A stretch of DNA of 64,000 bases, taken from assembly GCA_030390025.1 (NCBI GenBank), contig CM059427.1:188108001-188172000 (forward strand), given 5' to 3'. The stretch is from Squalus acanthias (lineage: Eukaryota). Below the pieces are notes generated by a model. That model was not told the DNA's origin, made no database searches, and saw only the letters and a list, made by a program, of their open reading frames with translations. Shown here in pieces: positions 1,213 to 63,289 of this stretch. Both the position numbers and the translations under genes were made by a program. The number at the start of each line of letters is the position of its first letter. Position 1 is the first letter of the stretch.

Positions 1213-1492
1213 GCAGATATAGATGGAATACATCATTCGAGGTACAATTATGGGGAAGGAGAGAGATGCCCTGACCTGCTCTGTCTCTGATGTCACTGAA
1301 TCAATGACATTTGTTTGGATCAGAAACTAAAGCAACATTGTTGAAGAGAAATCGTTCAATGGATGGAATTGGGAAGGGAAATCATTGAGACTGATTATTC
1401 AGAAAGCTGACAGAGACAGAGGGAACTGGATATGTGTTTTGTTTTATCAAAACAGCCCCAGGTTTTACCCCTGTACTATCTGGAGCCCAGTG
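1213..1492 (+). pseudogene. Disrupted C2-type Ig-domain exon with WxC motif (IgSF receptor copy A)
   Basis: From 1271: LTCSVSDVTESMTFVWIRN*SNIVEEKSFNGWNWEGKSLRLIIQKADRDRGNWICVLFYQNSP. B-strand Cys, C-strand Trp and F-strand W-I-C are present. In-frame TAA at 1328-1330. The expected donor reads agtg/ctaagt instead of gtaagt. The 5' boundary is uncertain. Confidence 0.8.
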
Positions 1493-3166
1493 CTAAGTGA
1501 CTCCGCGTTTGCGCTCAACAGAAAATTCTTGTCACTAATTGTTCTTTTTACCAGAGATGACCCCTCATCCTTTGTGTCCTATTTCTCTCCACTATTGCTC
1601 ACAGCCTCCACATTCATAATTATTCACACCACAGTTTGAAACCACAAGAAATGCCACACAGTGGCTCAGACACATTGGGGGTAATTTTGACTTCGGGCGA
1701 TAGAGTCAAACGAGCGATATCGGATCAGCCGCCCGTTATACATCGCTCCTGATTTTCAGTTCCATTGATTTCAAAGTCAAAATTGTATCGGAAGGTTGGA
1801 AGGAGTGTGCAGTTTCAGATATGGAGGCTGAAGGCATGTGGCCTGATCAGAGAGTAAGGAGAGGGAAGAGTATGGTTCCTGTCTCGCCGCCCATGATTTT
1901 CTGATCAGCACGGGCTGTGTGTGAGGTTCTATCACTGGTGCAGAGCCTCAGAAAATCTACCCTCAGATAACTCAGCACAGCCTGGGATCGAGTTTGGTAC
2001 CTTCCCGGTCCGTATGTCTCAGATACGCATTGAGACAAGGCAAGCATTTATTTTTGAGAGCAAAATGGTACAGAAGCCATTTCCGTTGGTTTTCTGACCC
2101 AAAATCAATCCGAATCTTTAGGCAGAATGTTAAAAAAAAAATCACAGCAAAAAGCAATTCGCAGCTGCAAAAATTGCAATTGAATGTCTCCAAACTTCAG
2201 GCTCAGAGAAACTCTTCTTCTCTGCCTGTCTCAGCTGATCCTGGAAACATCGGAGCCTCATCACTCTCATTCTAACTGAGGGCTCGTGCACTGTGAGCAC
2301 AAGAGCAGGAAACTTGAGGCTCTGGGCGGCCTCCTGAAACAGGCTTTAGGTGTCTTGCACATGTAATTCTGGGTCCTATTGCCAACTGGAGGACCCCGAT
2401 TGAAATTGGTGGACAGATGGGCGGAGTTTATGCCGGGCCAGCTCCAGCTCACTGTACCAGGTTTTGAGTGGATGAACCACTGGTGTTTAACAGGACCATT
2501 GGAGGCCACTCAAGAAATGGCCGGAAAATCTTTTAACAGTTACATTTCTGTGGAGCCAGGGGGAGATGGAGTGCTTCTCCTGGCTCCACAATAATACTGC
2601 GGCCTGGGTTCGACCTCCACACAAGCCCACGGGTTTGGCTCCCCAAAGGACCTACCTGTGGGCTGGTTCAGCATCGAAGCTGGCTGGAATTCATCAGGCC
2701 CCCACTGGGACACAACGATTGGCATCTGCGTATCGTCTGTTTCATTCTAATGAGGGCTGATGGTGAATTTCATCTGGCCCCAGGCCGGCAGGGACCGGCG
2801 CTCAAAGCAATCACTTCGCCAACTCGATGCCCATTTTGGGACAAAGTTCAATTTCTCAGACTTGGAACCTGCAGATTTAAAAGCAGAGGAATGAAAGGGG
2901 ACCTTAAAGAGCTTTATAAGATAATGAATGGAACAGAAAATATTGGTCTGGAGGAAAATCTCTGGACTGGTATAAGAGGCAGTTGGAGACTGTGATGATG
3001 AGACTGTAAGATTACATCGAAGGATTAGCTGGAGGAACCGACTATCTTCCCTCATCCCTTGTCTTTATTTATCCTCATAATAATAAGGTTGAGTCCATGA
3101 GGGTGCTGCCAGAAAATGAAAAGTGAAGGTGTAGTGTTAGGAGATTTAAATCAGTCAGGAAATAAT

Positions 3167-6399: not shown

Positions 6400-6503
6400 T
6401 GAGACCACTTCCGGAGATTTGGATCATCACAGTTTCGGGCTACTTGTTGGTTATTCTGGGCGTTGCTGTTGGACTAATTTGCTGCTTGAAGAGGATGACC
6501 AGA
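6400..6503 (+). CDS. Transmembrane exon of IgSF receptor copy A
   Basis: Acceptor ttgtccttcacAG, phase 1; encodes RPLPEIWIITVSGYLLVILGVAVGLICCLKRMTR; donor GTAAGA at 6504, phase 0. Confidence 0.85.
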
Positions 6504-7516: not shown

Positions 7517-7624
7517 ATATCGAACAGCGGGAATCCACCCGAGCCGACAGAAAATAAAACGGATGATTCAGAAGAAGCCGTCGCATTACAGACCCTGAAC
7601 TCTGATACTGATCTGAGATCATAG
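7517..7624 (+). CDS. Cytoplasmic (last coding) exon of IgSF receptor copy A
   Basis: Acceptor tcttgcctcttgtcAG; phase 0 matches the TM exon; ISNSGNPPEPTENKTDDSEEAVALQTLNSDTDLRS*. Candidate poly(A) signal AATAAA at 8296. Confidence 0.65.
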   Translation: MSNSGNPPEPTENKTDDSEEAVALQTLNSDTDLRS

Positions 7625-25210: not shown

Positions 25211-25969
25211 AGATGATCCTCAGATTTCTCCATTTTTAGATGTAAAACAAAATCAATGCCCATTTTTATGCTTATATCTAAATAGTTTTAAAATGCAGCA
25301 AAAAAGGTTCCGAAAAATCAAACCTTGTGCCTTCTAAAGTTGTACCTCTCCTAAAACTTTCAGAAACTTCTGCTTTGTCTCCTTCAAGATGAGTAATAAT
25401 TTTGGGTGCACATTGCAACATAAATTACAAGTGTTCGCACATTGCAAACTCACATTCAGGGTGGTTTTGGAGTTGTCGGTCTTTCTGATGAGGAGACAAC
25501 TTTCTTTTGAAGCTGTTGGTCAGTTTTTCATCAGTTGCAATGTATTTATGTCTTGACTTCAACACATTGAGGATGTGGGTAAGAGGTAGAATGAGTCAGA
25601 TGGCAAATTTGTACCTTAGGAGGAACAAGAGAGAAAAGCTCAGAGAAGCATTAAACTTAACAATATGAATAATATAGAAAGACAAGACAGGTCACAAAGG
25701 GGAATGAGGAAGATTCAAAGTTCTGGCCCATCATCTTCCACCACTCCTTTCATTATAACACAACAGATTCTCTGATTTACCATGAGTTCTGCCATTTGAG
25801 ATCCTCCAGTAACATTTACAATAACAGATCCCAATATTGGCCCCTTTGCTACCCATCCTGAAATGTTTGTGTGGTTGAATTTGAGCTACCATCTGTTTCC
25901 TTTTTGGAGCCAATTTTCTGTCTCAGCTCAAACGTCCACAACACCAATGATGTCTGAACCCTGCGCTGA

Positions 25970-26002
25970 AAGGGAAGAGGAAGCTCGCCAGCCCTGTGGT
26001 TT
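25970..26002 (+). promoter_or_regulatory. Putative promoter core, tandem ETS (GGAA) plus RUNX (TGTGGT) sites, copy B
   Basis: gggaagaggaag..ccctgtggttt, conserved at 47841-47871, about 125 bp upstream of a conserved splice donor. Confidence 0.5.
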
Positions 26003-26127
26003 CACAAGAGTCAATGCTATTTACTTTGTGCAGAGCAACGACTGAGAGCCTCAGTGTGTTGTGTGTCGCTGTGCTGGGAGCTTTGCTGCTCAGTCTCTGG
26101 ACTTCTTCACTAGTCTCTTCCCACAAG
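26003..26127 (+). other. Putative non-coding exon 1, copy B (start approximate)
   Basis: Donor CAAG/GTAGGC at 26127/26128, conserved in copy C, lying upstream of the ATG-bearing leader exon. Confidence 0.55.
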
Positions 26128-26949
26128 GTAGGCAATCTTACTGCAATCATTCTTTTTAAAGGATTGATTCAAATGTGGTTTGAATAACTGATCACATTTC
26201 TTAAAGATGTTGCACCCTTTAGACTAAACAAGGGCATTAAGTGCTTATTTATTTTGTTTCCTCTTCTATTTCACAAACTCCTATAAGAGGGTTTCTTACA
26301 ACTCAATGACTGCCGTCTGCTATTTTACACATTTTAAGCTTTCCTGCTTGTTGCCTGGTTGATATAAAATTTTAGTCTTTAACTGAATTTGTTTTTTCTG
26401 GTTTCCCAAGTGATGCTCTGGTTCTGTTTGAGGTTTTCATTGTCCTTCAAAGTTCTGCTGGCGATTCAGTTCTTTGACTAATCAGTGATGCCCAATTTAG
26501 TTGAAAACGTCTCCCAGAGAAATAGGAAGTAAAAGAGTGAAAAACTAAAATGTGAGAGAAGAGATGAACCATTACGGGCAAACTTGATTGGCAGCCCTTA
26601 GTGTGGGCTTGACGACTGCCCCTACTTTTAGTTCAGCTCCTCCAGTGAATATGATACAGGGAAAAGCAGAAGCTCTAATTGACCTAAGGATCTGCCTGAA
26701 ACCCGTTACCTTGTAATTGAGCTCGGAAAGCACAGCAATTACACCTTGCAGTCTGAAATCGTCACATTGAGTTATCATAGTTTCCCTTTATCGGCACAGT
26801 AATACAGTGTGTGTGAGATGGTCCAATGCTCCTGCCCTTATAAACCAGCCTCTGACCTACTGTGAGCAGCACCATAGCAGATACACTACCGTTAAAGAAT
26901 TCTGTTTGGAAATCTATAAACAGAAAGATTACAGCCTATTTACAGTCAT

Positions 26950-30313: not shown

Positions 30314-30423
30314 GCAAAGAGATGGAATCTGTGAAATGAGGCTATGATTTTGCTGCAGCAAAATGCCAGCTGGTTTGATGTTCAGTTTCTTTGTGTTTCT
30401 ACTTCCGTCTGTTTTCACACAAA
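30314..30423 (+). CDS. Signal-peptide exon, copy B (ATG at 30363); no Ig exons found downstream in its own copy
   Basis: ttcttacAG acceptor; MPAGLMFSFFVFLLPSVFTQ plus 1 nt; donor GTACGT. Confidence 0.75.
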
Positions 30424-37300: not shown

Positions 37301-37695
37301 CTCCATTCATATATTTGACAGGTCTTCCTGTCAAATGTATGAAGGGAGATTCCCTTCTCTTATTGGCTCCCCATGGCCCACGTGATCCCAGGGACGCTGC
37401 GAACTACCTGCGCCTCTGGGATATGTGGGCCCTGCACACCGGCAGTTTGGAGAGGCCCAGCATCGGAATTGTGCGCCTCCTGGGAGCCCTCAGGTAAGGG
37501 CACAGATTTTTCCTGATTGCAGTCCACCGCCCACGGGAGGCCTACGATCGGAAAATACGGGCCACCCTGTTTAAAGGAGCAGGGACATGAAAATAAAGAC
37601 CTTACTTACTTGTTGAATACTCGGTGTGTGAATTTGTTAAACACTAAGATGAAGTAAAAAAATATGATTGTGATTGGTGGAAAAAAGGCACTTAC

Positions 37696-37805
37696 TTTGT
37701 GTGAAAACAGACGGAAGTAGAAACACAAAGAAACTGAACATCAAACCAGCTGGCATTTTGCTGCAGAAAAATCATAGCCTCATTTCACAGATTCCGTCTC
37801 TCTGC
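37696..37805 (-). CDS. Inverted copy of the signal-peptide exon (ATG at 37756)
   Basis: Identical 61-nt coding part, intact AG acceptor and GTAAGT donor on the minus strand. Confidence 0.7.
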
Positions 37806-47840: not shown

Positions 47841-47996
47841 TGGAAGAGGAAGCTCGCCTTCCCTGTGGTTTCACAAGAGACAGCGTCAATTACTTTGTGC
47901 AGAGCAACGACTGAGAACCTCAGTGTGTTGTGTGTCGCTGTGCTGGGAGCTTTGCTGCTCAGTCTCTGGACTTCTTCACTAGTCTCTTCCCACAAG
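47841..47996 (+). promoter_or_regulatory. Putative ETS/RUNX promoter and non-coding exon 1, copy C
   Basis: ggaagaggaag..ccctgtggttt; donor CAAG/GTAGGC at 47996/47997; no ATG in the exon. Confidence 0.55.
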
Positions 47997-48756
47997 GTAG
48001 GCAATCTTACTGCAAACATTCTTTTTAAAGCATTGATTTAAATGTGGTTTGAATAACTGATTGCATTTCTCAAAGATGTTGCACCCTTTAGACTAAACAA
48101 GGGCATCAAGTGCTTATTTATATGGTTTCATCTCCTTTTTCATAAAATGACACTAAGGGGGTTTCTTACAACTCAATGACTGCCATCTGCTATTTTACAC
48201 ATTTTAATGTTTCCTGCTTGTTACCTGGTCGATATAAAATTTTGTTTTTAACTGGATTTGTATTTTCTGGTTTCCCAAGTGATGCTCTGGTTCTGTTTTA
48301 GGTTTTCATTGTTCTTCAAAGTTCTGCTGGCGATTCAGTTCTTTGACTATTCAGTGATGCCCAATTTAGTTGAAAACATCTCGCAGAGAAATAGGAAGTA
48401 AAAGAGTGAAAAACTAAAATGTGAGAGAAGAGATGAACCATTACGGGCAAACTTGATTGGCAGCCCTTAGTGTGGGCTTGACGACTGCCCCTACTTTTAG
48501 TTCAGCTCCTCCAGTGAATATGATACAGGGAAAGGCAGAAGCTCTAATTGACCTAAGGATCTGCCTGAAACCCGTTACCTTCTAATTGAGCTCGGAAAGC
48601 ACAGCAATTACACCTTGCAGTCTGAAATCGTCACATTGAGTTATCACAGTTTCTCTTTATCAGCACAGTAATACAGTGTGTGTGAGATGGTACAATGCTC
48701 CTGCCCTTATAAACCAGCCTCTGTCCTACTGTGAGCAGCACCATAGCAGATACACT

Positions 48757-49499
48757 GGCCCAGAAATTGATCTCGCTCTGTTCCCGCGGGGGTAAGCCTT
48801 CCCCGCGATGTCTCACCTCGCTTATGCTTTTTCAGATCCAGCTCGCACGAACTTGATGTTCCAGACATCAGCTGTGCTGGGCTTGCGTATCCCAGCGGCG
48901 TAGTGAATTCGTGCGAGCTGTGGGATCACGTGACTCAGTTAGAGCCAATGGCAGCACACCATCTTCCATTCATAAGTCTCACAGCATGGCTGTGAAATCA
49001 ATGAATCTTACACCCCCCCAAAATAACAGCTAAACCTCAATTAAATTTAAAAAAAACCATCACATTAATAAAATAAGTATAGTTAATTAAATTAACCATT
49101 TTAAATAAAAAATTAAATTTTTTGAAAAAATTTAAAATCTTTTAAAAAGTTATAAAAATAAACTTACCTGTCTTTAAAGTCTATAAAAAAGATATACCTG
49201 TAAAAAAAAATTCAAAAAAATACTTAATTCACTACTTACCTTCTTAAAAGCGGGTCTTACTCCTCCTTTTTACATTTCCAAAATCTTCCCTACTTACCTG
49301 CGCGTCCAAAGCATGAAGTGCACAGCGTGCGCGCAGCCTGTAGCGCGCACGCGATGCACCCAGGCCACGCCCCCTTTTCAGAAGAGCAATTGCCGGTTTT
49401 CAGCGCATGCGCAGGGCATGCAGAAAACCGGCAATTGGAGTGGGAATACGCGAGAGTACGCAGTGCGTACTCTCGCGTCCCGGGATCAATTTTCGGCCC
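48757..49499. mobile_element. MITE family 1 with a demonstrable empty site
   Basis: Termini ggcccagaaattgatc / gatcaattttcggccc; TSD ACT; empty site atacACTacc at 26881-26890. Confidence 0.92.
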
Positions 49500-50578
49500 A
49501 CTACATTTAAAGAATTCTGTTTGGAAATCTATAAACAGAAGGATCACTGTCTATTTACGGTCATTTGGGTCTTTAAAATGTCTGACCATAATGAAATTGT
49601 CATGAGCTTGTGCAACTGGTACTGACTCAGGCCAAGTGAATAACTCAAAGCAGTAGACGGTTATTTTAGTGTCAACATTTGTTTCTTACCCAAAATCTAA
49701 AACAAATGTTCTGGTCATAAATGTAATTACTATTTGTGGAACTTGCTGTGCGCAAATTGACTGCCGCATTTACTACATTAAAAATGTACTTTATTGATTG
49801 TAAAGATTTTTGCGATGACCTGAGGTTGTGAAAGGCACTATAACTACATGCTACAGGTATCATTGAGGCAGAGACAATTGCATCTTTAAGGGAAAATTGG
49901 TAAATCTTTGAAGTAGGGTAAGATTTAGGGCTATGAGAGAGAGTGGGGCAGTGGGATTAGTTTTGGATTGTTCTAGCAAAGTGCTGGCACAGACACAACA
50001 GGACAAATTCTTCTGTGACGTAATCTGCAATGTCTCTATAGAAAGGAGGGATGGCATTGAAGATTATATTGAGCAATTATCTTTGTATCCATCAGAAAGA
50101 ACCTTATCCTGGAGGTAGTCATTTACTTGTTAAGGTTCTGTCTGAGAATGTACACATGTATGTGTGTGCACATAGAGAGAAAAAACATGTATTTATATAC
50201 TGCGCTTGACATCGAGGCAGCATTTAACCATGTGTGGCACCAAGGAACCCCAGTAAAACTGAAGTCAATGGGGATCAGGGGGAATACTCTCCAGTGTTGG
50301 AGTCAAACCTGGCACAAAGGAAAAAGATTGTGGTCGTTGGAGGCCAATCATCCCAAGATGAGGCCATCACTGCCCATATTTTGGTAGCTCAGGATGGTAT
50401 TTTGTGCCCTAAAAATGGAGGCTGCGCGTTGGAATTTTTTGGACTTTCAGTCCCAGCCTCAAGATAGACTGCTGCCACCTCTAGGCTGCTGATTTGAATC
50501 ATATGCAATCTCAATACAAGGAATTTCTTTGCTTAATACAGAGTGCACCAACCTGAGGGAAGATTATCAAACAGCTCA

Positions 50579-50970
50579 CAACAACAACAACTTGTATTTA
50601 TATAGCGCCTTTAACGTAGTAAAATGTCCCAAGGCGCTGCACAGGAGTATTTTAAGACAAAAAATTTGACACCGAGCCACATAAGGATAAATTAGGGCAG
50701 GTGACCAAAAGCTTGGTCAAAGAGGTAGCTTTTAAGAAGTGTCTTAAAGGAGGAAAGAGAGGTAGTGAGGTGGCGAGGTTTAGGCAGGGAATTCCAGAGC
50801 TTAGGGCCTAGGCAACAGAAGGCACGGCCACCAAAGGTTGAGCGATTATAATCAGAAATGCTCAAGAGGGCAGAATTAGAGGAGCGCAGATATCTCGGGG
50901 GGTTGTGGGGCTGAAGGAGGTTACAGAGATAGGGAGAGGTGAGGCCATGGAGGGATTTGAAAACAAGGAT
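50579..50970 (-). mobile_element. L2-type LINE 3' end
   Basis: (aac)n tail followed by ttgtatttatatagcgcctttaacgtagtaaaatgtcccaaggcgct. Confidence 0.75.
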
Positions 50971-51464
50971 GAGTTGTCACACAACTGACAAGCAAAGTAT
51001 ATTGGTGCACAGGTGTTATGGAATTAAGTTGACTCTGATTTGGCTCAGTGTTAGTGATGAACAAACCAAGACTTTCCTTTTGGTAACTACTTCTTTTAAC
51101 CCTAATCTTGACCAGTCATTTATATTATTTTATATCAGGTTTTTAAAAAATGTTTAAATTTATTCATTTACAGGATGTGGGCATCGCTGGCAAGGCCAGC
51201 ATTTATTTCCCATCCCTAAGTGCCCTTGTGAAGGTGGTGTCCTGTAATATCCTTTCACTGAGATGCAAAACAGCCATGTAAAGGTTTTAAAAAAATGCAC
51301 AACAAAGATTTTTTTTAATAAATTATTCCCGAGGTATTGGCATCGCTGGTAATGCTGGCATTTTTTGCCCATCATCAATTGCCTTTGAGAAGGTGTTGGT
51401 GGGCCTTCTTCTTGAACCTCTGCAGTCCTTGTGGTGAAGGCAGTCCCACAATTCTTTTAGGTTG

Positions 51465-52103
51465 CATGTTGGCCGTTATTGCAAGGAGGTTGGAGTACAA
51501 GAGTAAGGAAGTCTTGCTACAATTGTACAGGGCTTTGGTGAGACCACACCTGGAGTACTGTGAACAGTTTTGTCTCCTTATCTAAGGAAGGATGTACTTG
51601 TCTTAGAGGCAGTGCAACAAAGGTTCACTGGATTGATTCCTGGGATGAGAGGGTTGTCCTATGAGGAGAGATTGAGTAGATTGGTCCTATACTCTTTGGA
51701 GTTCAGAAGAATGAGAGGTGATCTCATTGAAACATATAAGATTTTGAGGGGGTTTGACAGGTTAGATGCTGAGAGGTTGTTTCCCCTGGCTGGAGAGTCT
51801 AGAACTAGGGGACATAGTCTCAGGATAAGGGGTCGGCTTTATAAGACAGATGAGGAGCAATTTCTTCACTCAGAGTGTTGTGAATCTTTGGAATTCTCTA
51901 CCCCAAAGGGCTGTGTATGCTGAGTTGTTGATTATATGCAAGGTTGAGATAGATAGATTTTTGGACTCTAGGGGAATCAAGGGATATGGAGATTGGACTT
52001 TAAAATGCAGTTGAGGTCAAAGATCAGCCATGATCTTATTGAATGACGGAACAGACTCGAGTGGCCATATGGTCTATTCCTGCTCCTAATTCTTAAGTTC
52101 TTA
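51465..52103 (+). mobile_element. CR1 3' RT end and 3' UTR
   Basis: LYRALVRPHLEYC..RRMRGDLIETYKIL..TRGHSLRI. Confidence 0.9.
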
Positions 52104-52630
52104 AGTAGGTAGGAAGTTCCAGGATTTTGACGCAGCGACAATGAAGGAACAGCAATATATGTCCAGTTAGGATGGTGTGTGACTTGGAGGGGTACTTGGA
52201 GGTGATGGTGTTCCCATGCACCTGCTGTACTTGTCCTTCTAGGTGGTGGAGGTCGCAGGGTTTGGAGGTGCTGCCGAAAATGCCTGGCAAGTTGTGCAGT
52301 GCATCCTGGAGATAGGACACACTGCAGCCACGGTGCGCAAGTGGTGGAAGGCGGGAATGTTTATGGTATTGGATATGTTGCCAATCAAGTGGACCGCTTG
52401 TCCTGGATAGTGTCGGGCTTCTTGCAAGTGGAGAGTATTCCATCACATCCTGACTGGTGCCTTGCAGGTGGTGGAGAGGTTTTGGGGAGTCACTTGATAC
52501 AGCAAACCCAGCATCTGACCTGTGCTAGTAGCCACGGCATTTATATGGCAGGTACAGTTGAGTTTCTGGTCAATGGCGATCTCATGGAAGTTGCTGGTGG
52601 TGGATTTGCCGATAATAATGCCATTGAAAG
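52104..52630 (-). mobile_element. Decayed L2/CR1-group LINE fragment
   Basis: MMEYSPLA.. and HHLRTVAAVC motifs. Confidence 0.8.
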
Positions 52631-53182
52631 CATGTTATTATACAAATATTATCAATAAATGGAGCAGCAGTGAATAAGAAAATGCTAATTGCTGTTAATT
52701 CATATCCTCAGTTATATAAAATTCATAGGTTATCTGATCAGTTCTATTTAACTATGTGGAAGTGAAAATGACATTGTAGAAACCTTTGCAAGTGCACTTT
52801 TTGTCCATATATAATAGGTAATTACATTTCTCTTTTTTATTTCTACTTCAATGACTTTATTGTCAGTTGGAAAGTCTATGTGGCTGGTGGATAAGAGGTG
52901 GATTTTGCATGGTCCATCATTTATTCGGATGAGTAACTTTTATTACACTTCTCACAGGAAGAGGTGGAGAAGAAGTTTATGAAGAAATTTACTGAAGAAG
53001 TTTATTGTACATTTTACAGTTCCAAGTTAGAATGGGGAAATAATTTGGAAAGCTCTTTTATCTCATTTATTTTCTTCACAGTCTGAAGTGTTAAACATAT
53101 TTAGGAAATGTGCCTGGGTTTTACTTCTGGTGGTTTTCTGGTGCTATATATATATCTATATCTATTTGTATATTTCTTACAG

Positions 53183-53291
53183 GCAAAGAGACGGAATCTG
53201 TGAAATGAGGCTATGATTTTCTGCAACAAAATGCCAGCTGGTTTGATGTTCAGTTTCTTTGTGTTTCTACTTCCGTCTGTTTTCACACAAA
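53183..53291 (+). CDS. Signal-peptide exon of IgSF receptor copy C (ATG at 53231)
   Basis: AG acceptor; MPAGLMFSFFVFLLPSVFTQ; phase-1 donor A/GTAAGT splices in frame to 59623. Confidence 0.85.
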
Positions 53292-53894
53292 GTAAGTGCC
53301 TTACTTCCACCAATCACATTCATATTGTTTTACTTTATCAGAGTGTTGACTGAATTCACACACCTCAGCAAGCAAGGAAGGTCTTTATTTTCCTGTCCCT
53401 GCTCTTTTAACAGGGGTAGAGGTTCTGCTTTGGGCACAATCGGCGATTCCGGCGCAAATTTTTTCTCTAGTTTCCGTTCAAACTCATTTGCATATCGGCG
53501 AAAGCAAAATCTGCCCTGAAGCAGCGCAATTGGCCAACGTTTTAAAACGTCATTTTTTTTTAAGTTGCTTTAAAAAGTATTCCTTGATATATTTAAGAGT
53601 GGTAACTTGGTGCAGTTTGCTTAATACAGCTGGAAATGGGTTTAACAAAAAATAAGCATTTTAAATCAGTGTCAATCCACCACCTGTGAGTAATCCAATC
53701 AGGGAAATTGTGCCGAGAAAACCAGCGTGATTGAGCGGAAACGCCAGGCCGCTGTGTAAGTTCACTTTTCAGAGTCCAACAGTGGAACAACTTAATAAAA
53801 TGAAAAATATTAGCAGATTTCTCATTGCTCTTCAATTCCTTTTCCCGATCTATCTATTAATCTCTCTATCTGTCGATACATCTACTCTTGCATG

Positions 53895-56800
53895 TTTTTT
53901 TGTACTTGTCTTTTATGGGAAGTGGGCATTGCTGGCAAGGCTAGCATATACTGCCCATCACTAATTGCCCTTGAGAAGGTTGCAGTGAGCTTCCTTCTTG
54001 AACTGCTGCAGTCCGTGTGGTGAAGGTACTCCCACAGTGCTGTTAGGTAGGGAGTTCCAGGATTTTGACCCAGTGACGATGAAGGATCGGCGATATACTA
54101 CTAAGTCAGGATGGTGTGTGACTTGGAGGGGAACTTGGAGGTGGTGGTGTTCCCATGCATCTGCTGCCCTTGTCCTTCTAGGTGGAAGAGGTCGTGGGTT
54201 TGGGAGGTGCTGCCGAAGAAGCCTTGGCGAGTTGCTGCAGTGCATCATGTAGATGGTACACACTGCAGCTACAGTATGCTGGTGGTGGAGGGAGTGAATG
54301 TTTAATGTGGTAGATGGGATGCCAATCAAGCGGGCTGCTTTGTCCTGGATGGTGTCGAGCTTCTTGAGTGCTGTTGGAGCTGCACTCATCCAGGCAAGTG
54401 GAGACTATTCCATCACACTCCTTACTTGTGCCTTGTAGATGGTAGAAAGGCTTTGGGGAGAGAGGAGGTGAGACACTTGCCACAGAATACCTAGCCTCTG
54501 ACCTGCTCTTGTTGCCACAATATTTATGTGGCTGGTCCAGTTAAGCTTCTGGTCAATGGTGACCCCTAGGATGTTGATGGTGGGGCATTCGGCAATGGTA
54601 ATGCCATTGAATGTCGAGGGGCGGTGGTTAGACTCTCGCTTGTTGGAGATAGTCATTGCCTGGCACTTGTGTGGCGTGAATGTTATCTGCCACTTATCAG
54701 CCCAAGCCTGAACGTTGTCCAGGTCTTGTTGCATGCGGGCATGGACTGCTTCATTAACTGAGGAGTTGTGAATGGCACTGAACACTGTGCAGTCATCAGC
54801 GAACATCCCCATTTCTGACCTTATGTTGGAGGGAAGGTCATTGATGAAGCAGCTGAAGATGGTTGGGCCTAGGACACTGCACTGAGGAACTCCTGCAGTG
54901 ATGTCCTGGGGCTGTGATGATTAACCTTCAATCACCACAACCATCTTCCTTTGTGCTAGGTATGACTCCAGCCAGTGGAGAGTTTTCCCCCCGATTCCCA
55001 TTGACTTCAGTTTTACTAGGGCTCCTTGATGCCACACTCGGTCAAATGCTGCCTTGATGTCAAGGGCAGTCACTCTCTCTTCTCCTCTGGAATTCAGCTC
55101 CTTTGTCCATGTTTGGACCAAGGCTGTAATGAGGTCCGGAGCCGAGTGGTCTTGGTGGAACCCAAACTGATCATCGGTGTACAGGTTATTGATGAGTAAG
55201 TGCCGCTTGATAACACATTCGATGACACCTTCCATCACTTTGCTGATGATTGAGAGTAGACTGATGGGGCGGTAATTGGCCGGATTGGATTTGTCCTGCT
55301 TTTTGTGGACAGGACATACCTGGGCAGTTTTCCACATTGTCGGATAGATGCCAGTGTTGTAGCTGTACTGGAACAGCTTGGCTAGAGGTGGGGCTAGTTC
55401 TGGAGCACAAGTCTTCAGCACGATAGCCGATTTGTCGTCAGGGCCCATTGCCGCTATTGTATCCAGTGCGCTCGGCCGTTTCTTGATATCACGTGGAGTG
55501 AATCGAATTGGCTGAAGACTGGTTTCTGTGATGGTGGGGACCTCAGGAGGAGGCCAATATGGATCATCCACTCGGCACTTCTGGCTGAAGATGGTTGCAA
55601 CACTTCAGCCTTGTCTTTTGCACTCACATGCTGGGCTCCGCCATCATTGAGGATGGGGATATTCATGGAGCCTCCACCTCCCATTAGTTGTTTAATGGCC
55701 CACCACCATTCACGACTGGATGTGGCAGGACTGCACATCCTGACCTAGTCATACTCATAGAATCATACTTTCAGCCAATGTCCCAAACTACACCATCATC
55801 ATCCCTGGGTATTTCCTGTCCCACCGGAAGGACAGACCCACCAGGGGTGGCGGCACAGTGGTATACAGTCGGGAAGGAGTGGCCCTGGATGTCCTCAACA
55901 TTGAATCCGGACCCCATGAAGTCTCATGGCTTCAGGTCAAGCATGGGTAAGGAAACCTCCTGCTGAATACCACCTACCGCCCTCCCTCAGCTGATGACTC
56001 AGTACTCCGCCATGTGATCCGTTGATTGTGGGATTGCTTAGCTCTGTCTATAGAATGCTGCTTCTGCTTTTTAGCATGCATGTAGTCCTGTGTTGCAGCT
56101 TCCCCAGGTTGGCACCTCATTTTTAGGTACGACTGGTGCTGCTCCTGGCAAGCTTTTCTACACTCCTTATTATTCCCCTGGCTTGATGGTAATGGTAGAG
56201 TGAGGGATATGCAAGGCCATGAGGTTACAGATTGTGGTGGAATACAATCCAATTCTGCTGCTGCTGATGGCTCACAGCGCCTCATCGATGCCCAGTTTTG
56301 ATCTCCTAGATCTGTTCTGAATCTTTTCCATTTAGCATGGTGCTCATGCCACACAACACGATGGAGGGTGTCCTCAGTGTGAAGACGGGACTTTGTCTCC
56401 CCAATGACTGTGCGATGGTTACTGTTACCAATACTGTCATGGACAGATGCATCTGTGACAGGTAGTTTGGTGAGGAAGAGCTCAAGTAGGTTTTTCCCTC
56501 GTGTTGGTTCTCTCACCACCTGTCACTCTTGGTGATGGACATTGAAGTCCCCCACCCAGAGTACATTCTGTGCCCTTGCTACTCTCAGTGTTTCTTCCAA
56601 GTGGTGTTCAACATGGCGGAGTACTGATTCATCAGCTGAGGGAGGGCGGTAGTTGGTATTCAGCAGGAGGTTTCCTTACCCATGCTTGACCTGAATCCAT
56701 GAGACTTCATGGGGTCCGGATTCAATGTGGAGGACTCCCAGGGCCACTCCTTCCCGACTGTATACCACTGTGCCACCACCTCTGGTGGGTCTGTCCTACC

Positions 56801-57050
56801 CGTGGGACAGGACATACCCAGGGGTGGTGATGGTGTAGTTTGGGACATTGGCTGAAAGTATGATTCTGTGAGTATGACTATGTCAGGCTGTTGCTTGACT
56901 AGTCTGTGGGACAGCTCTCCCAATTTTGGCACAAGTCCCCAGATGTTGGTGAGGAGGACTTTGCAGAGTTGAGTGGGCTGGGTGTGCCATTGCTGTGTCC
57001 ATTGCCGGTGCTGAGGTCAATGCCGGGTGGTCCGTCCAGTTTCATTTTTA
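53895..57050 (-). mobile_element. L2/CR1-group LINE ORF2 remnant (endonuclease plus RT) with an internal inverted segment
   Basis: QQPDIVILTES; NPANYRPISLLSIISKVME..QFGF..LDIKAAFDRVWH; MFADDC; LDTIQDKAARLIG. Confidence 0.92.
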
Positions 57051-57064
57051 TTATTTTGTTTCGG

Positions 57065-57388
57065 AGCGGTTTGTTACAACTGAGTGGTTTGCTAGTCCAT
57101 TTCAGAGAGAAATTAAGAGTCAACCACTTTACTGTGGGTCTGGAGTCACATATAGGCCAGACCAGGTAAGGACGGCAGATTTTCTTCCCTAAAGGACATT
57201 AGTGAACCAGAAGACTTTTTACGACAATCCGGTAGTTTCATGGTCACCATTACTGATACTAGCTTTTTATTCCAGATTTATTTAATGAACTGAAATTAAA
57301 TTCCCCAGCTGCTGTCGTGGAATTTGAACTCACGTCTACTTGGATCATTAGTCCAGGCCGACTGGATTACCACTATGCTACCGTTCCC
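57065..57388 (-). mobile_element. tRNA-derived SINE
   Basis: Minus strand ggtagcatagtggtaa (A box) ... gagttcaaattcc (B box), followed by a SINE body. Confidence 0.65.
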
Positions 57389-59622
57389 TACAATAGCAAA
57401 CTTACATCAGAGCATTTTCTCTATTCTATGTTGTGTTATATTTGATCAATCAACAGTTTAACAGATTGCATGTGGTATAGAATGGGTCAAAAGTAATAAC
57501 AATATTGAAATGTTAATAAATGTTAAAATTCAGAATTATTGAGAATAATTTTTTGTGTTCGAGGCTGTGCGACATATAAAAGTTACAGTTGGGTAAAACA
57601 TCATTTGAAAAGGTTTGAAGGTTTGTCGCTGATCCTCACTTCGGGTCACATCTTGGTTTAGTGTCCAAAGGTGTTTAAACATCACTGTGAATACAGTGTG
57701 CACAGAGCCATTGTTTTTTTGGTAATTGTGATGTGAGCTGGTATTTAATCAAGACTTACAGACACATGGGATTTACTGCTTTAGATCACTTCCCTTGTGA
57801 AAATGTAAATAAAATAATAGTTACAAATAAGGATTAGTTTACTGTTACTCTTGAAATGAAGGAAGATAATGATTCAAAGGTGGAAATGTAGTCTAGGGAA
57901 ATATAGCGATGAACTATTGACTGAATGATGTGACCACTGTCACCAGAGGTCACCTGGAAGTATTCAAATGCATTAACGTTAAATGTCACCGTCACAGCCA
58001 CAGTTGTCACCTTTCACAGATAAGGCAAAGCACCTGGTGGAAAGAGACTGCAAGTCAGGTTCCAAGAGCTGGTTTATCTCTGTCACGGTGTCTAATCAGA
58101 CAAGGCGAGAGGATGCAGGAACTGGCTGATCGCTGCCCACCTCAGGAAACCCCATCACAGGACAAACGGGATGGAGACCCGACGTAACCGTATCCTGCAC
58201 CAATTTCACTCCCCGAGCTCCACCTTGATAATTCTCCCTGCAGACCAGGAGTCGGGAGGAGATTTCCTTTATTTTCAGTAACAAGAAATGTAGCCATGAC
58301 CTCTCTTTTTATTTTGATTACTTTTTGTAATAATAATGTATGTTACATAGAATTACAAAGTATTTTACAGCACAGAAACATCTCTCTCATGTACCTATCT
58401 ATGTTCAGAAAGCTCTGGTAATAGATACACAGAATATCTACTGGAAGTGTTCTGTTTTTCCCTGTAACAGTGCCTGCAGTGAAGGTGACATGATACAGCG
58501 CTTTCTCCTCATGTATTAGTGCTTCATTGTAACCATCTCTGGACTGAACTCCTCAATGAAGGAGCTTTGCCATCTTCTTGGGATTGTAATGGGAGAGGAT
58601 TTCACTCTCCCTTCTTGCCCAATTTTGGATAGATTGTTGTCGGCAGGGGCAGAAAGTGGGGATGGGGATCCGGCGGGCTGCTCCCTGCAGATTGTCGTCA
58701 CTTTACTGAATATATGGACCCAAATATGGAGAGATTTATTCAAATTGCGTGGAGAGGCCAAGTGTTATCAGATGTTACATTCACCGTCATTACTGCCATA
58801 ACAATGCTGGAACACAAGGGACAGCAGCATGTTCCCGGCATCTAGCGTTGCGTTGGCTTGCGGGAGGGGATTTCAATTTCAAACATCTATCTGAAGCAAA
58901 GCAATTGATCATGATCAAAGCAATTTGATCCCTCCCTCTCCCAGGTGGGTCCCTCGGATCAAAGCACGAGTCCTACTGGGAGCCCACAATAATTATCAAA
59001 ATTATGCTGATCTCAGGAAATTCCCCAGGGATCAGCGTTTGGGAAGACAGGCGGGCCTACGGGCAGATTATGGCCAAGTGGAAAATCCTGCCTCCCTTTG
59101 TTGTTGGTGCTCCTGTGGGTAGCCTGGTCACTAGTGGTCCAGGAGAACCAACAACGTACTGGGCATTGCACAAGAGGAGGGGAGATCACTTGTAGAGATC
59201 ACTGACCTGATTTATGAGCCTGAAGTGATATGACTGCACCAGTACTGTATTCAGTTTTAGGAGAATACTGATTATTGTGACGGTATTTCAGATTTCTTAA
59301 CAATATGGGAGTAACGATTCCCCTTCCACACTCCCAGTAAATGCTGGAAATACGGATTGTGAAATTGGACACTGCAGGCCCACGAGGTCAGAGTGCAGTG
59401 GCAGAAATTCACCCTCTAATGTCCTAAAGTATCACTGGATTAGGCCAGATTATTCCAGACAGTCAGCTCTTCACCGGGGTGTGTATGTGTCATTGCTGAA
59501 TCCATTGTATATAAAAAATATGACTGTAAATAAATGAAGTCCAATATTAATCATTACAAACATGGGATTAAGTAGTTGTGATTTAAATATTTAAATATTT
59601 ACATTGTTCCTCTTTCTAACAG

Positions 59623-59964
59623 GAAAACCAAATCATATTTATTTTTTGGATAAGCGAGATGACTTTCAATTAAACGGACCGGACAATCCTGGGAATGGCC
59701 CTGTTGTCTGGGAATGGAAACCACACTCAGGGCAAGAAATCCAGCGGCTGGTTACTTTTCCCAAAGGGAGTTCGAGCTGGTGGGACGCACAATGGAACTA
59801 TCACTTTAGAAATGACGACTTGTACCAGATGATAGAACAGGATCCTGGTACCATTAACCTGAGAATTAGAAAACCCACATTTAATTTTGCGGGATCGTTC
59901 ATCTTGACTCAAACACAGCCGAGTAATAAAATCCTGAAACAGTATGAAATATTTGGGATCAAAG
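59623..59964 (+). CDS. First Ig (V-like, cysteine-less) domain exon of IgSF receptor copy C
   Basis: tctttctaacAG ... AAAG/GTGAGT, phase 1-1, 342 bp open. KPNHIYF..FQLNGP..VVWEWKP..LVTF..INLRIRKPTFNFAGSFILT..YEIFGIK. Confidence 0.88.
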
Positions 59965-60484
59965 GTGAGTGGGACAAAGTCTAGCAAAGGAACAATAAAA
60001 TGATTCTCCGTAAATAATTTCATGTGTAATGATGAGAGATTGCCAGGATCACGTGAGATTTATATCACCCAGTGCAGAGAGCATCTCTCATTAAAACAAC
60101 CAGGGGAAAGATTTTGTTCATTGTTTCTCCTGAAATGGTCAACATGAGTAAAAACATTTCGACAATTTCACCAGAAATAGCAAACCGAGTAATCTACCCC
60201 ACAGAGAGTATTATGGTCTGTACACTGGCACACTCTCTGTCAGATGTACTGAATTTTGTTACCAAACCAATAGATCCCTTGTAGTAATGGGCCTCAGCGC
60301 GATGGGACAGGAATAAGATTGGCCAGAGTCAGTGCTCCTGATTGCTGTCCAGTGAACCTGTTAGATGTGTCACTTGGTTGAGGTCCCAGAGGATGTCAAG
60401 TGTCCCTGGAACTCGTACTATGACAAGGAGTTAACACCTTCAGGAAAGCAAGAAGAACATGGCAGAGAAAAAGAGATACATTGA

Positions 60485-61346
60485 GGGTAATTTTAACCCC
60501 AAAAAATGGTTGGCTTGGGGTCGGGTGGGAGGTTACAGAGTTAAAAAGCTGAATCCTGGCCCCAACTCGCCTCCAACCCGCCCACTTCTGGTTTTAACGG
60601 AGGTGGGACGGGGGTGGGCGGGGGCAGCTAACCTGCTCGCAGGAGGTGAGTTCGCACTTTTAATATTCTAATGGTGTTGGGTGCCTCATAGTGATCCACC
60701 ATTTTAAATTTAACTGTGGGCTCGTGGAACCTGCCAGCGAAAGGGTGACGAGGACTGCTGGATCCAGGGTTTCTGCCTCGCCACCCGCCCGCGATCGGAC
60801 CCCTCCCCCCGACCCTACCGATCTCCAACCCAACCTCACCCTGGGGCCTCCGACAACCCCCCCCCACGAGACCACTGATCTCTGATCGTGCCTCCTACCT
60901 TCTGACCTCCCCTTCGGCCTTCCGACCTCCCCCCTCCAGCCTTCCGATCTCTCTCTGATCTCCAATTCCCCCTACGGCCTTCCGACCTCCCCCCTCCAGC
61001 CTTCCGATCTCTCTCTGATCTCCAATTCCCTCTCCGGCCTTCCGACCTCCCCCCTCCAGCCTTCCGATCTCTCTCTGATCTCCAATTCCCTCTCCGGCCT
61101 TCCGAACTCCCCCCTGCAGCTTTCCAACTGTCCTCTGATCTCCGATACTCCCTCTGGCCTTCCAACCTCCCAACTCTGGCCTTCCGACCTCCCCACTCCG
61201 GCGTTCCGACAACCCCACCATTCCCTCCCTCCTCTCTGTGGTCTGGTGCATCAGGCCTTTACATTCGAGCCTTTCCTTCTGGCTGGCTGCGGGCGGGAAA
61301 CAGAGATTTTAAATGTTGATCAGGCCCTGTCGCTAAATTCAGTCCC
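60485..61346. mobile_element. MITE family 3 with internal 60-bp tandem repeat (~4 copies, ~60916-61155)
   Basis: Left terminus gggtaattttaac; unit ggccttccgacctccccctccagccttccgatctctctctgatctccaattccc.. Confidence 0.7.
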
Positions 61347-61359
61347 GCCACTCCCTATC

Positions 61360-61925
61360 TGCCTCCCAAGTCTTTCCACCATCTACAAGGCACAAGTAAG
61401 GAGTGTGATGGAATACTCTCCACTTGCCTGGATGAGTGCAGCTCCAACAACACTCAAGAAGCTCGACACCATCCAGGACAAAGCAGCCCATTTGATTGAC
61501 ACCCCATCCACCACCTTAAACATTCACTCCCTGCACCACCAGCGTACCGTGGCTGCAGTGTGTACCATCTACAAGATGCACTGCAGCAACTCGCCAAGGC
61601 TTCTTCGGCAGCACCTCCCAAACCCGCGACCTCTTCCACCTAGAAGGACAAGGGCAGCAGGCGCATGGGAACACCACCACCTCCAAGTTCCCCTCCAAGT
61701 CACACACCATCCTGACTTAGAAGTATATCGCCGATCCTTCATCGTCGCTGGGTCAAAATCCTGGAACTCCCTCTCTAACAGCACTGTGGGAGTACCTTCA
61801 CCACTCAGACTACAGCGGTTCAAGGAGACGGCTCACCACCACCTTCTCAAGGGCAAATAGGGATGGACAATAAATGCTGGACTTGCCAGCAACGCCCAGA
61901 TCCCATAAGTAAATAAAAAAAAATT
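61360..61925 (+). mobile_element. L2/CR1-group LINE 3' fragment with A tail
   Basis: STIYKAQVRSVMEYSPLAW..SKSWNSL..HHHLLKG; aataaa and poly(A). Confidence 0.9.
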
Positions 61926-63019
61926 AAAATTCCGGCCATTGTATCTACTCAAAAATATTTGAAAACATTTAGTATAAATAAATCAAAATCTTTAGTACCT
62001 GCCAACCAAGGATGCTGCTCAACAGCTGCACTTTCTGGTTGGTTAATGTGTGTAACATCTGAATGAGGCTGAGGTCACTGTCTTATGTACTTGGTACAAA
62101 ATATAATCCAATCCTGAAATGTCGAAGTGGCCAAAATATGATCGTGACTTTACTGGGCCTGGACCATTGCTCCTGAGGTGTTGGCCCAAACTACACCAGA
62201 ATGAGGTGACCATAACAGAAAGTCAACTCATTTACATTTGTTAGTGACACTCATGGTACATAGTGCCTGGTACACGGGGAATGTCACACGGGTCGGGCAC
62301 CAGAGTGTTGGGCGCCAGCAGCTAATGGATGCCACCATTATTTTGGCCTGACATTGGAATTAAAGTCCCTGTTGAAGATTTGATTCTTACTTGTCATGTT
62401 GTAGGTGGGACTGAAAGTCAGGGGGGGCATTTTTAGAACAAGCCTCTCCTGAAGTGCCATTCCTCATGGACGATCAATGATTGGAGCCCTGCTCAGGAGC
62501 ATTTTGGGAGCCCACTCATTTAAATAACGTAATGACTTTTGATGTGGATTTTGTGCACAGGCTCCCAGTGCGTGTGTTGGGTGGTCTTACTGAAGTGTGC
62601 GAGGCACATTGAGAACAGAGTGGGACTGGAGCCTTCTCCATGTCTGATAATATGGGCACTACATTTCCATCACACCCTCCTCTGGTGAGATTCCATCACC
62701 TGTCCATTGTGGTGTCGGCTTCCCCAAATGTCATTCAAACCATGTAACCTTAACCTGACCCCGGATACTCCAGCAGGGTCAGGGGTAAAGGTCATCGGCC
62801 GCACTCTGGCTCACTTACGCTGGCAGAGCTGGACTGAGAATTTTCAGGCTCGCTGTGTTATTCTACTGATAAAATGCACTTGTGTGTAATCTGGCCTGAC
62901 TCTTTAATGCAGCAGGTACAAGTGCTGATGATGGGCACATCCTACGGTCAGTTAGAACCTAATCATTGGATTGTACATGTCACTACTTACACTAAATCTT
63001 ATTGATCTGTTTTTCACAG

Positions 63020-63289
63020 TTGAGTCGAGTCCACAGAGTGCTGTGGTGGGCAGTGACGTTACACTCAGCTGTACCATCTCCAAACTCTCAGATACAGTCA
63101 GTCTTCAATGGAAACAGAGAGACTCATCTCAGCAGAACAGGAGCAACACTGATCAGATCCGACTAAATAACACAGTCTATCTGATCGTCAAACATGTTGC
63201 AGTAGAGGATAAGAAGTTGTACGCGTGTGAAGTGCAGGAAAATGGATCCATTATTCTCACAGGAAAAGCAGATTTTTCTGTGGCCCAGG
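63020..63289 (+). CDS. Second Ig (C2-type) domain exon of IgSF receptor copy C
   Basis: ttttcacAG ... CAGG/GTAAGT, phase 1-1. VESSPQSAVVGSDVTLSCTIS..LQWKQ..YLIVKHVAVEDKKLYACEV. Confidence 0.93.

What the first reader, a model, noticed from the sequence alone, without database searches (positions are those of the whole stretch)
47841..63289. Intact 5' half of an unusual shark IgSF receptor gene: leader, cysteine-less V domain, C2 domain
Seen: four exons splice in compatible phases (exon 1 to 47996; 53183-53291; 59623-59964; 63020-63289) to give MPAGLMFSFFVFLLPSVFTQ-RKPNHIYF...GIK-VESSPQ...SVAQ with no stops, in DNA where almost every other ORF is decayed. Seen: the upstream copy supplies a membrane-proximal C2 exon, a TM exon and a short tail. 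Inference: these are tandem members of one multi-Ig type-I receptor family under birth-and-death evolution. I cannot assign it to a named gene, so it may be a chondrichthyan-specific immune receptor family. Paralogy of copy A with copy C is inferred from orientation and architecture, because no exon type is shared inside the window.
Basis: partly seen in the sequence, partly recalled or inferred. Interest (0 to 1): 0.85.

Follow-up and report, generated by a model that had tools for sequence, protein, structure and literature searches.

The report
Shark paired Ig receptor gene start
These are the real first coding exons of a shark cell-surface receptor gene from a large, unnamed family of switch-on and switch-off immune-type receptors that cartilaginous fishes share with sturgeons, bichirs and eels.

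Summary
The three coding exons are real. They are the leader (53183-53291), the cysteine-free D1 (59623-59964) and D2 (63020-63289). All are open, joined in phase 1 and flanked by AG/GT. Contigs of three RNA-like runs cover the D1 and D2 exons and barely touch the introns. One contig carries the D1-to-D2 splice.

With a 48-row alignment, D1 folds as an Ig V domain (pLDDT 92). It cannot form the usual disulfide.

D1 and D2 are 76% and 89% identical to an "uncharacterized protein" of the sawshark Pristiophorus japonicus. That protein reads leader, V, C2, V, C2, membrane helix with a lysine, short tail.

Of 122 relatives fetched, 27 have the membrane lysine and no ITIM, 35 have ITIM tails, none has both, and 60 have neither. 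This is a paired activating/inhibitory receptor family.

It is not shark-specific: sturgeon, paddlefish, bichir and eel carry it (30% identity over 506 residues, E 6e-61).

It fails defining features of CD4/LAG-3, CD2/SLAM and DICP. G6F-like could not be tested.

The upstream copy is a broken pseudogene. Exon 1 is untested.

Other first-stage notes of this scan flagged sister genes of this family elsewhere in the same genome. My paper searches found no description of the family.

The parts
47841..47996 (+). Proposed non-coding exon 1 (5' UTR); unverified
   Evidence: GT donor at 47997-98. The region 47677-48756 is 92.6% identical to 25816-26887. No reads were laid here. It lies upstream of the ATG, so phase is not informative.
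53183..53291 (+). Leader exon: ATG at 53231 (alternative in-frame ATG at 53213), 20-residue hydrophobic signal peptide, ends in phase 1
   Evidence: tblastn of seven homologues matches 53219-53290 at 83-95%.
59623..59964 (+). D1 exon: 113-residue V-set Ig domain with no cysteine; phase 1 at both ends
   Evidence: No Pfam hit. 35 homologues by phmmer. AlphaFold2 pLDDT 92. IgV fold by Foldseek and VIA-align. Exon-shaped contig depth in X2, X8 and X12.
63020..63289 (+). D2 exon: 89-residue C2/I-type Ig domain with one Cys pair and a YxC F strand; phase 1 at both ends
   Evidence: 89% identical to P0059. Exon-shaped depth, a spliced D1-to-D2 contig end, and a contig running on into a D3-like exon.
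1242..1497 (+). Copy A: D4-type C2 pseudo-exon with the WxC F strand, an in-frame TAA at 1328-1330 and a frameshift near 1456-1462
   Evidence: 58.9-70.3% identity to D4 of the seven homologues.
6400..6503 (+). Copy A: transmembrane exon of the activating type, but with Ile where homologues have the membrane Lys
7517..7624 (+). Copy A: short cytoplasmic tail exon with its stop codon
   Evidence: 71% identity to the tail of P0059.
30363..30422 (+). Copy B: orphan leader exon, identical in protein to the leader of copy C
   Evidence: Its flanks 30022-30554 are 89.2% identical to 52876-53415. No D1 or D2 exon follows.
37697..37756 (-). Inverted second copy of the orphan leader exon (other arm of a palindrome)
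   Evidence: 38097-37565 is 88.7% identical to 52876-53415.
25816..26887 (+). Copy B: duplicate of the region holding the proposed exon 1
   Evidence: 92.6% identity over 1084 bases to 47677-48756.

Best explanation
Window 53183-63289 holds the first three coding exons of a transcribed gene for a type-I membrane receptor. The exons encode a signal peptide, a membrane-distal V-set domain (D1) that lacks the Ig disulfide, and a C2-type domain (D2).

By homology, the rest of the protein lies beyond the window's end. It should be a second V domain with the disulfide (D3), a second C2 domain with a WxC F strand (D4), one membrane helix and a tail.

The gene belongs to a multigene family that comes in two forms. 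One form has a lysine inside the membrane helix and a short tail without motifs. I infer that it signals through a DAP12- or FcR-gamma-type adaptor. The other form has an uncharged helix and a long tail with two ITIMs and often a YxN motif. I infer that it recruits SH2 phosphatases.

D1 is the most divergent domain, so I infer that it contacts the ligand.

Shown: the exons, their splicing, the V fold of D1, family membership, and the two tail types in homologues.

Inferred: which tail this gene has (more likely the lysine type), adaptor use, ligand binding by D1, and an immune role.
For: - Open phase-1 exons with AG/GT borders.
- Contig depth in three RNA-like runs from two studies is high on the exons and near zero beside them. 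D1 bins read 641/656, 59/63 and 2504/1582 against 0-17 in the flanks. D2 bins read 397/551, 21/67 and 859/2732 against 0-46.
- A contig of X12 that lies on the D2 exon carries 13 loose letters before 63014. They equal window 59946-58, the end of the D1 exon. The next six letters fit the last six D1 bases with one mismatch to the intron.
- Another X12 contig runs on behind 63287 in frame into a D3-like start.
- D1 finds 35 proteins. The best matches in the fetched set are P0059 of Pristiophorus japonicus (76% in D1, 89% in D2) and P0087 of Heptranchias perlo (70.5%).
- D1 modelled with 48 aligned rows gives pLDDT 92 and pTM 0.85. It matches IgV domains: Foldseek best is 2B4 at E 1.3e-6; VIA best Z is 14.0.
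- At the inferred canonical Cys positions, 0 of 48 rows have Cys in strand B and 5 of 48 in strand F.
- Of 122 family proteins, 27 have the TM lysine and no ITIM, 35 have ITIM tails, 0 have both and 60 have neither.
- Mean pairwise identity on 26 common rows is D1 43%, D2 61%, D3 49%, D4 53%.
- hhalign: D1D2 against D3D4 scores 97.9%.
Against: - The runs are only guessed to be RNA, and they are contigs, not reads.
- The laid contigs differ from the window by 2-9%. Examples: 2 of 130 and 4 of 165 letters in X8 on D2; 6 of 122 in X8 and 19 of 218 in X12 on D1. The transcripts may therefore come from an allele, a close paralogue or a sister species.
- The splice rests on one contig end in X12. 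A second likely spliced contig (X8 record 31) could not be read in full.
- The 3' half of the gene is outside the window and I could not fetch it. Its neighbours, copies A and B, are dead.
- No function has been tested for any family member.
- 60 of 122 relatives show neither signalling feature; many of these are partial models.
Confidence: 0.75

Rival explanations
1. The exons are the still-open 5' remnant of a dying gene copy. The transcripts seen come from a close paralogue, and this copy makes no receptor.
For: - Copy A carries a stop and a frameshift.
- Copy B is only exon 1 and leader duplicates.
- The laid contigs are 91-98% identical to the window, not 100%.
- The best DNA holder has only 0.61 of the sampled words.
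Against: - There is no stop or frameshift in 222 codons.
- All splice sites are intact.
- The nearly invariant family residues W29, W31, L79, G90, Q96 and L104 are all kept.
- A contig continues from D2 into a D3-like exon.
- A first-stage note places D3 2168 bases beyond the window's end and a lysine TM exon 22 kb beyond it. I did not check either note.
Confidence: 0.15
2. It is a CD2/SLAM-family receptor: a disulfide-less V domain plus a C2 domain that engages other SLAM or CD2 family members.
For: - The V domain lacks the disulfide.
- The Foldseek best match of D1 is 2B4/CD244. NTB-A and CD84 also rank high.
- NTB-A is second by VIA with Z 13.3.
Against: - V domains of many families score within Z 11-14.
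- 37 of 44 D2 rows have two cysteines, not four.
- 0 of 80 tails carry an ITSM.
- D3 has the disulfide.
- No SLAM or CD2 chain is among the nine hits at E <= 1e-7 with profile A2, among the 38 hits with A4, or among the best 60 with A1.
Confidence: 0.04
3. It is a diverged member of the CD4/LAG-3/G6F-like group, or the cartilaginous-fish counterpart of bony-fish DICPs. That would make it a known lineage under another name.
For: - V-C2-V-C2 architecture arising from an internal V-C2 duplication.
- WxC in D4 in 34 of 36 rows.
- LAG-3 is the best solved relative of two family profiles, at E 3e-12 and 1.7e-12.
- The ESM Atlas lists g6f-like, CD4 and CD4-1 clusters among the nearest (leads only).
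- YxN is present in 31 of 80 tails, as described for G6f-like (PMC3528668, passages).
- DICPs have D1-D2 or D1a-D2a-D1b-D2b ectodomains with inhibitory, activating and secreted forms (bioRxiv 10.1101/2021.06.11.448072, passages and section 13).
Against: - WxC is absent from D2 (0 of 44 rows). Tails have neither Cx(C/H) nor (F/Y)xxL(D/E) (0 of 80 each). No ITAM was found (0 of 80).
- With profile A2, CEA scores almost as well as LAG-3 (6e-12). With the D3-D4 profile A4, CD276 is best (1.5e-8) and LAG-3 drops to 7.8e-4.
- DICP D1 domains keep C23 and C104 (section 13 of the preprint). This D1 has neither.
- No Pfam CD4-specific model hits.
- No G6F-like or DICP sequence could be fetched for a direct test.
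Confidence: 0.3

Closest known systems
CD4/LAG-3 family (Takizawa et al. 2023, PMC10768021; abstract, sections 3.2 and 3.6, and passages read)
   Same: - Type-I receptor with a V-C2-V-C2 ectodomain that looks like a duplicated V-C2 unit.
- WxC in strand F of D4.
- One V domain without the disulfide.
- D1 on a single exon, as in shark CD4 and LAG-3.
- LAG-3 is the best solved sequence match for two family profiles.
   Different: - A multigene family, not a single gene.
- D2 has YxC, not WxC.
- The tails have no Cx(C/H) or (F/Y)xxL(D/E) motif.
- Members carry either a membrane lysine or classical ITIMs.
- The LAG-3 match is not robust to the choice of profile.
Teleost G6f-like / mammalian G6F (Hughes et al. 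2012, PMC3528668, passages read; Ohashi et al. 2010 is not held, and what I say of it is recalled)
   Same: - Four extracellular Ig domains, one TM helix and a tail with YxN.
- The ESM Atlas puts g6f-like clusters nearest to shark P0005 and paddlefish P0117 (leads only).
   Different: - No ITAM in 0 of 80 tails.
- Paired lysine and ITIM forms.
- Expanded gene clusters.
- No sequence-level test was possible.
DICPs of bony fishes (Dornburg et al. 2021 preprint, 10.1101/2021.06.11.448072; passages and section 13 read)
   Same: - Clustered multigene family.
- Two alternating Ig domain types, in two- or four-domain forms.
- Inhibitory (ITIM), activating (charged TM residue), secreted and ambiguous members.
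   Different: - DICP D1 keeps C23 and C104, and usually two more cysteines. This D1 has none.
- The bowfin activating forms use arginine; here it is lysine.
- That preprint reports DICPs from teleosts, holosteans and coelacanth, not from cartilaginous fishes.
- Not tested by sequence.
CD2/SLAM family
   Same: An N-terminal V domain without the disulfide, followed by C2. 2B4, NTB-A and CD84 are among the best structural matches of D1.
   Different: No ITSM, a single disulfide in D2, and D3 with a normal disulfide. The structural match is no better than to V domains of other families.
Mammalian paired receptor families (KIR, LILR, SIRP, Siglec, CD200R, CEACAM); compared by working principle only, partly from general knowledge
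   Same: Near-identical ectodomains joined either to a TM lysine with a short tail or to ITIM tails. For example, Pristiophorus P0005 and P0053 are 97% identical over 85% of the length but have different TM segments and tails.
   Different: Different domain types and order. There is no detectable specific sequence relationship: only generic Ig Pfam models hit, and CEA reaches E 6e-12 with one profile.

Membership tests
Ig superfamily, V-set domain (D1) | Nine-strand V-type beta sandwich | tested here: met
   AlphaFold2 with 48 rows gives pLDDT 92. Foldseek TM is 0.6-0.72 to V domains. VIA Z is 11-14 to V domains over 95-105 of 113 residues.
Ig superfamily, V-set domain (D1) | Canonical B-F disulfide (C23-C104) | tested here: not met
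   The 113 residues contain no cysteine. At the positions I inferred from the I.L.G and G.F.L motifs, 0 of 48 and 5 of 48 rows have Cys.
CD4/LAG-3 | V-C2-V-C2 ectodomain derived from a V-C2 duplication | tested here: met
   Seen in homologues. hhalign gives D1~D3 91.8%, D2~D4 94.5% and D1D2~D3D4 97.9%. For this gene, only D1 and D2 lie in the window.
CD4/LAG-3 | WxC in strand F of both D2 and D4 | tested here: not met
   D4: 34 of 36 rows have W.C. D2: 0 of 44 have W.C and 40 of 44 have [YF].C. The window's D2 has Y.C.
CD4/LAG-3 | Tail motif Cx(C/H) (CD4) or (F/Y)xxL(D/E) (LAG-3) | tested here: not met
   0 of 80 and 0 of 80 tails of family members with a TM segment. This gene's own tail is outside the window.
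CD2/SLAM | Disulfide-less V domain, C2 domain with two disulfides, ITSM TxYxx(V/I) in the tail (feature list recalled) | tested here: not met
   The V domain lacks the disulfide, so that part is met. D2 has two cysteines in 37 of 44 rows. ITSM is found in 0 of 80 tails.
DICP | D1 and D2 domains with C23 and C104, usually plus two DICP-specific cysteines | tested here: not met
   The feature comes from section 13 of 10.1101/2021.06.11.448072. The window's D1 has no cysteine. 29 of 44 family D1 rows have none.
DICP | Sequence or phylogenetic grouping with DICP D1/D2 domains | not testable with these tools
   No DICP sequence could be fetched.
G6F-like | Four Ig domains, with YxN and an ITAM in the tail | tested here: inconclusive
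   Homologues have four Ig domains. YxN is in 31 of 80 tails and an ITAM in 0 of 80. The nearest Atlas clusters are named g6f-like. No sequence comparison was possible.
Paired activating/inhibitory receptor family (functional class) | Related ectodomains joined either to a charged TM residue with a short tail or to ITIM tails | tested here: met
   27 lysine-type, 35 ITIM-type, 0 both and 60 neither, of 122. For this gene itself the tail lies outside the window.

The most novel reading that the evidence does not exclude
This unnamed V-C2-V-C2 family could be the main germline-encoded paired (NK-type or myeloid-type) receptor system of cartilaginous fishes. It would be an ancient jawed-vertebrate lineage, sister to CD4/LAG-3/G6F-like, that most bony vertebrates lost or replaced. 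Its fast-evolving, disulfide-less D1 would read a polymorphic or pathogen-derived ligand.
Probability: 0.2. Interest if true: 0.75.

Novelty: new variant of a known kind. Interest (0 to 1): 0.5.

Why it matters
Which germline receptors control NK-like and myeloid cells in sharks is largely unknown. One survey found no FcR, FcRL, FcR-gamma or C2-only LRC homologues in shark genomes (Akula et al. 2014, PMC4016189, passages read).

This family has clear lysine-type and ITIM-type members in every chondrichthyan genome sampled, plus relatives in early-branching ray-finned fishes. It is a concrete candidate for that role.

It also bears on the origin of the V-C2-V-C2 design shared by CD4, LAG-3 and G6F-like.

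The finding itself is one gene's 5' half. Its value is as an entry point to the family, not as a surprise in itself.

Tried and rejected
- A single-sequence AlphaFold2 model of D1 was useless (pLDDT 40). It was replaced by the alignment-based model.
- D1 alone against PDB sequences gave one chance hit, an oxidoreductase at E 0.27.
- NCBIfam gave nothing relevant.
- The LAG-3 link looked promising with profiles A1 and A2. I do not rely on it. CEA scores nearly as well with A2. With the D3-D4 profile A4, built from four natural two-domain skate and ray proteins, CD276 is best and LAG-3 is weak.
- Structure searches could not single out a family for D1.
- The third homology search, with profile A3 and E up to 10, returned only family members plus weak arthropod and FcRL5 hits. 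It returned no CD4, LAG-3, G6F or DICP.
- Pfam at E up to 10 gave only generic Ig models and no hit on D1 of any homologue.
- Paper searches for a description of the family found nothing. I searched locus and accession names, shark, IgSF, ITIM and multigene terms, paired receptors with cartilaginous fish, MDIR, G6F-like and DICP. MDIRs are described as CD300/TREM/pIgR-like (PMC3031540, passages), which does not fit. I did not compare MDIR sequences.
- Supplementary files of PMC10768021 and of the DICP preprint are closed. They may hold sequences or gene lists that bear on whether this family was seen before.
- The joined (spliced) protein of the window was not made or searched. All searches were exon by exon.
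- The window has no N.

Full report
**Observation.**
- The leader exon follows an AG at 53181-82. It has an ATG at 53231, reads 20 hydrophobic codons plus one base, and ends before GT at 53292.
- The D1 exon, 59623-59964, follows an AG and ends before GT. It gives 113 codons with no stop and no cysteine.
- The D2 exon, 63020-63289, gives 89 codons with one cysteine pair.
- All junctions are phase 1.
- An in-frame ATG at 53213 may be the real start, because homologue models begin upstream of the leader core.
- Exon 1 (47841-47996) is non-coding. It has a GT donor and lies in a stretch that is duplicated at 92.6% identity. Nothing else tests it.

**Transcription and splicing.** No listed run is on record as RNA. 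Several small runs are guessed to be RNA. I laid contigs of X2, X8 and X12 (guessed RNA; two organisms, two studies) and X1 (DNA) on 58500-64000.
- In the three guessed-RNA runs, depth is high on the two bins of each exon and near zero beside them.
  - D1: 641/656, 59/63 and 2504/1582 against 0-17 in the flanks.
  - D2: 397/551, 21/67 and 859/2732 against 0-46 in the flanks.
- The DNA run covers all 30 bins.
- One X12 contig on D2 has 13 loose letters before 63014. They equal 59946-59958, the end of D1. The six letters that follow fit D1's last six bases. This is the 59964/63020 splice.
- Another X12 contig leaves the window at 63287 and continues in frame into a D3-like start.
- X8 record 31 has 60 letters that lie off the D2 exon. 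I could not see where they lie.
- Caveats:
  - These are contigs, and their RNA nature is a guess.
  - The pieces differ from the window by 2-9%, so an allele, a close paralogue or a sister species may be the source.
  - A very high-copy repeat at 61260-61995 fills the joint and loose-end tables.

**D1 is a V domain without a disulfide.** Pfam has no hit on D1.
- A single-sequence model failed.
- With 48 aligned rows the model reaches pLDDT 92 and pTM 0.85.
- Foldseek and VIA-align match it to V domains of many families:
  - 2B4 at E 1.3e-6;
  - NITR11 at Z 14.0;
  - NTB-A at Z 13.3;
  - Nav beta-4 at Z 13.0;
  - rat CD4 D3-D4 at Z 11.0, with the highest identity of the 50 rows listed, 18%.
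- No family stands out.
- At the positions I equate with the canonical cysteines, 0 of 48 rows have Cys in strand B and 5 of 48 in strand F.
- D2 passes the cut-offs of six generic Ig models.

**The family.** phmmer with D1 against 1.84 billion representatives gave 35 hits. A word-indexed search with P0005 gave 78.
- The named hits come from sharks, rays, skates and chimaeras. They are called 'uncharacterized protein', with stray automatic names such as VCAM1-like and CD276 homolog.
- In the fetched set, the best matches are P0059 of Pristiophorus japonicus (D1 76%, D2 89%) and Heptranchias perlo proteins. The window is therefore probably from a squalomorph shark.
- Full-length members read leader, D1, D2, D3 (V with disulfide), D4 (C2 with WxC), TM, tail. 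Longer forms repeat the four-domain unit.
- hhalign on column slices of alignment A2 gives D1~D3 91.8%, D2~D4 94.5% and D1D2~D3D4 97.9%. Cross-type pairs score far lower: D1~D2 6.5%, D1~D4 0.2%, D3~D4 2.7% and D3~D2 70.6%. The unit is therefore an internal V-C2 duplication.

**Paired receptors.** I took as family the 122 of 132 fetched proteins that match P0059 at E < 1e-15. The ten left out are listed.
- 27 have a conserved lysine in the TM helix and no ITIM.
- 35 have tails with ITIM motifs of two recurring types.
- None has both.
- 60 have neither, and many of these are partial models.
- Of the 80 with a TM-like segment, 34 have an ITIM and 31 have YxN. None has an ITSM, an ITAM, Cx(C/H) or (F/Y)xxL(D/E).
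- Pristiophorus P0005 (lysine type) and P0053 (ITIM type) are 97% identical over 85% of the length.
- D1 is the most divergent domain: 43% mean pairwise identity against 61%, 49% and 53% for D2-D4 on 26 common rows.
- From these facts I infer activating and inhibitory signalling and ligand contact by D1. None of this is tested.

**Range.** The family is not chondrichthyan-specific.
- Sturgeon, paddlefish and bichir proteins are colinear homologues. P0059 against sterlet P0119 gives 30% identity over 506 residues, E 6e-61.
- These fishes also show lysine, ITIM and YxN forms.
- A 2139-residue eel protein has six D1-like stretches.

**The window's other copies.** tblastn of seven homologues finds:
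- copy A's D4, TM and tail exons at 1244-7618;
- three leader copies;
- one D1 and one D2.

Copy A's D4 exon has a TAA at 1328-30 and a frameshift near 1456-62. Its TM exon has Ile where homologues have Lys.

Copy B duplicates the exon-1 region and the leader region. The leader is repeated again in inverse orientation.

**Comparison with known families.**
- LAG-3 is the best solved relative of profiles A1 and A2.
  - CEA ties with it in A2.
  - CD276 wins with the D3-D4 profile A4.
- The WxC hallmark of CD4/LAG-3 (PMC10768021, sections 3.1 passage and 3.6) is present in D4 only.
- The ESM Atlas names g6f-like and CD4 clusters as nearest. These are leads only.
- G6f-like has four Ig domains, YxN and an ITAM (PMC3528668, passages).
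- DICPs share the alternating two-domain design and the inhibitory, activating and secreted forms, but keep the D1 cysteines (preprint 10.1101/2021.06.11.448072, section 13).
- I could fetch neither G6F-like nor DICP sequences, so both remain untested.
- A first-stage note of this scan gave me the DICP lead.

**Verdict.** This is a real, spliced 5' half of a gene from an annotated but undescribed paired-receptor family. It is moderately interesting as an entry point to that family. The family's place among V-C2-V-C2 receptors is open.

Noticed in passing
window 61260-61995 (related copies at 53913-54465, 52106-52424 and inside 32.5-35.6 kb): A very high-copy repeat in the D1-D2 intron. Summed contig depth reaches tens of thousands to millions in all four runs, including the RNA-like ones. 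Copies elsewhere in the window are 84-92% identical.
   Followed up: partly
window about 13000-17950: A 5-kb G+C-rich stretch (GC 0.59, GC skew up to 0.64). It is open in several frames on both strands and reads as a proline-rich tandem repeat on the minus strand. It is probably a minisatellite.
   Followed up: no
window 29641-38477: A palindrome whose arms each hold a copy of the leader exon. The copies are identical in protein to the live one. No D1 or D2 exon follows either copy.
   Followed up: partly
window 6400-6503: Copy A's TM exon has isoleucine at the place where 27 activating-type homologues have the membrane lysine. This fits loss of function in a copy that also carries a stop and a frameshift.
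   Followed up: partly
window 1484-1497: At the end of copy A's D4 exon, the expected GT donor after the last codon's first base reads CT. A GT three bases upstream would keep the frame (my reading of the sequence).
   Followed up: no
proteins P0005 and P0053 (Pristiophorus japonicus): The ectodomains are 97% identical but the TM segments and tails differ: one is lysine type, the other ITIM type. This could be recent gene conversion between paired genes, or one gene with alternative 3' exons.
   Followed up: no
protein P0020 (Anguilla rostrata, 2139 aa): The only teleost hit. It has six D1-like stretches and six W.C motifs. The family may survive in eels as a very long multi-unit form.
   Followed up: no
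window 47840-47914: The proposed exon 1 opens with an ATG and a short open frame of about 24 codons that ends in TGA (my reading). If the exon is real, this is an upstream ORF.
   Followed up: no
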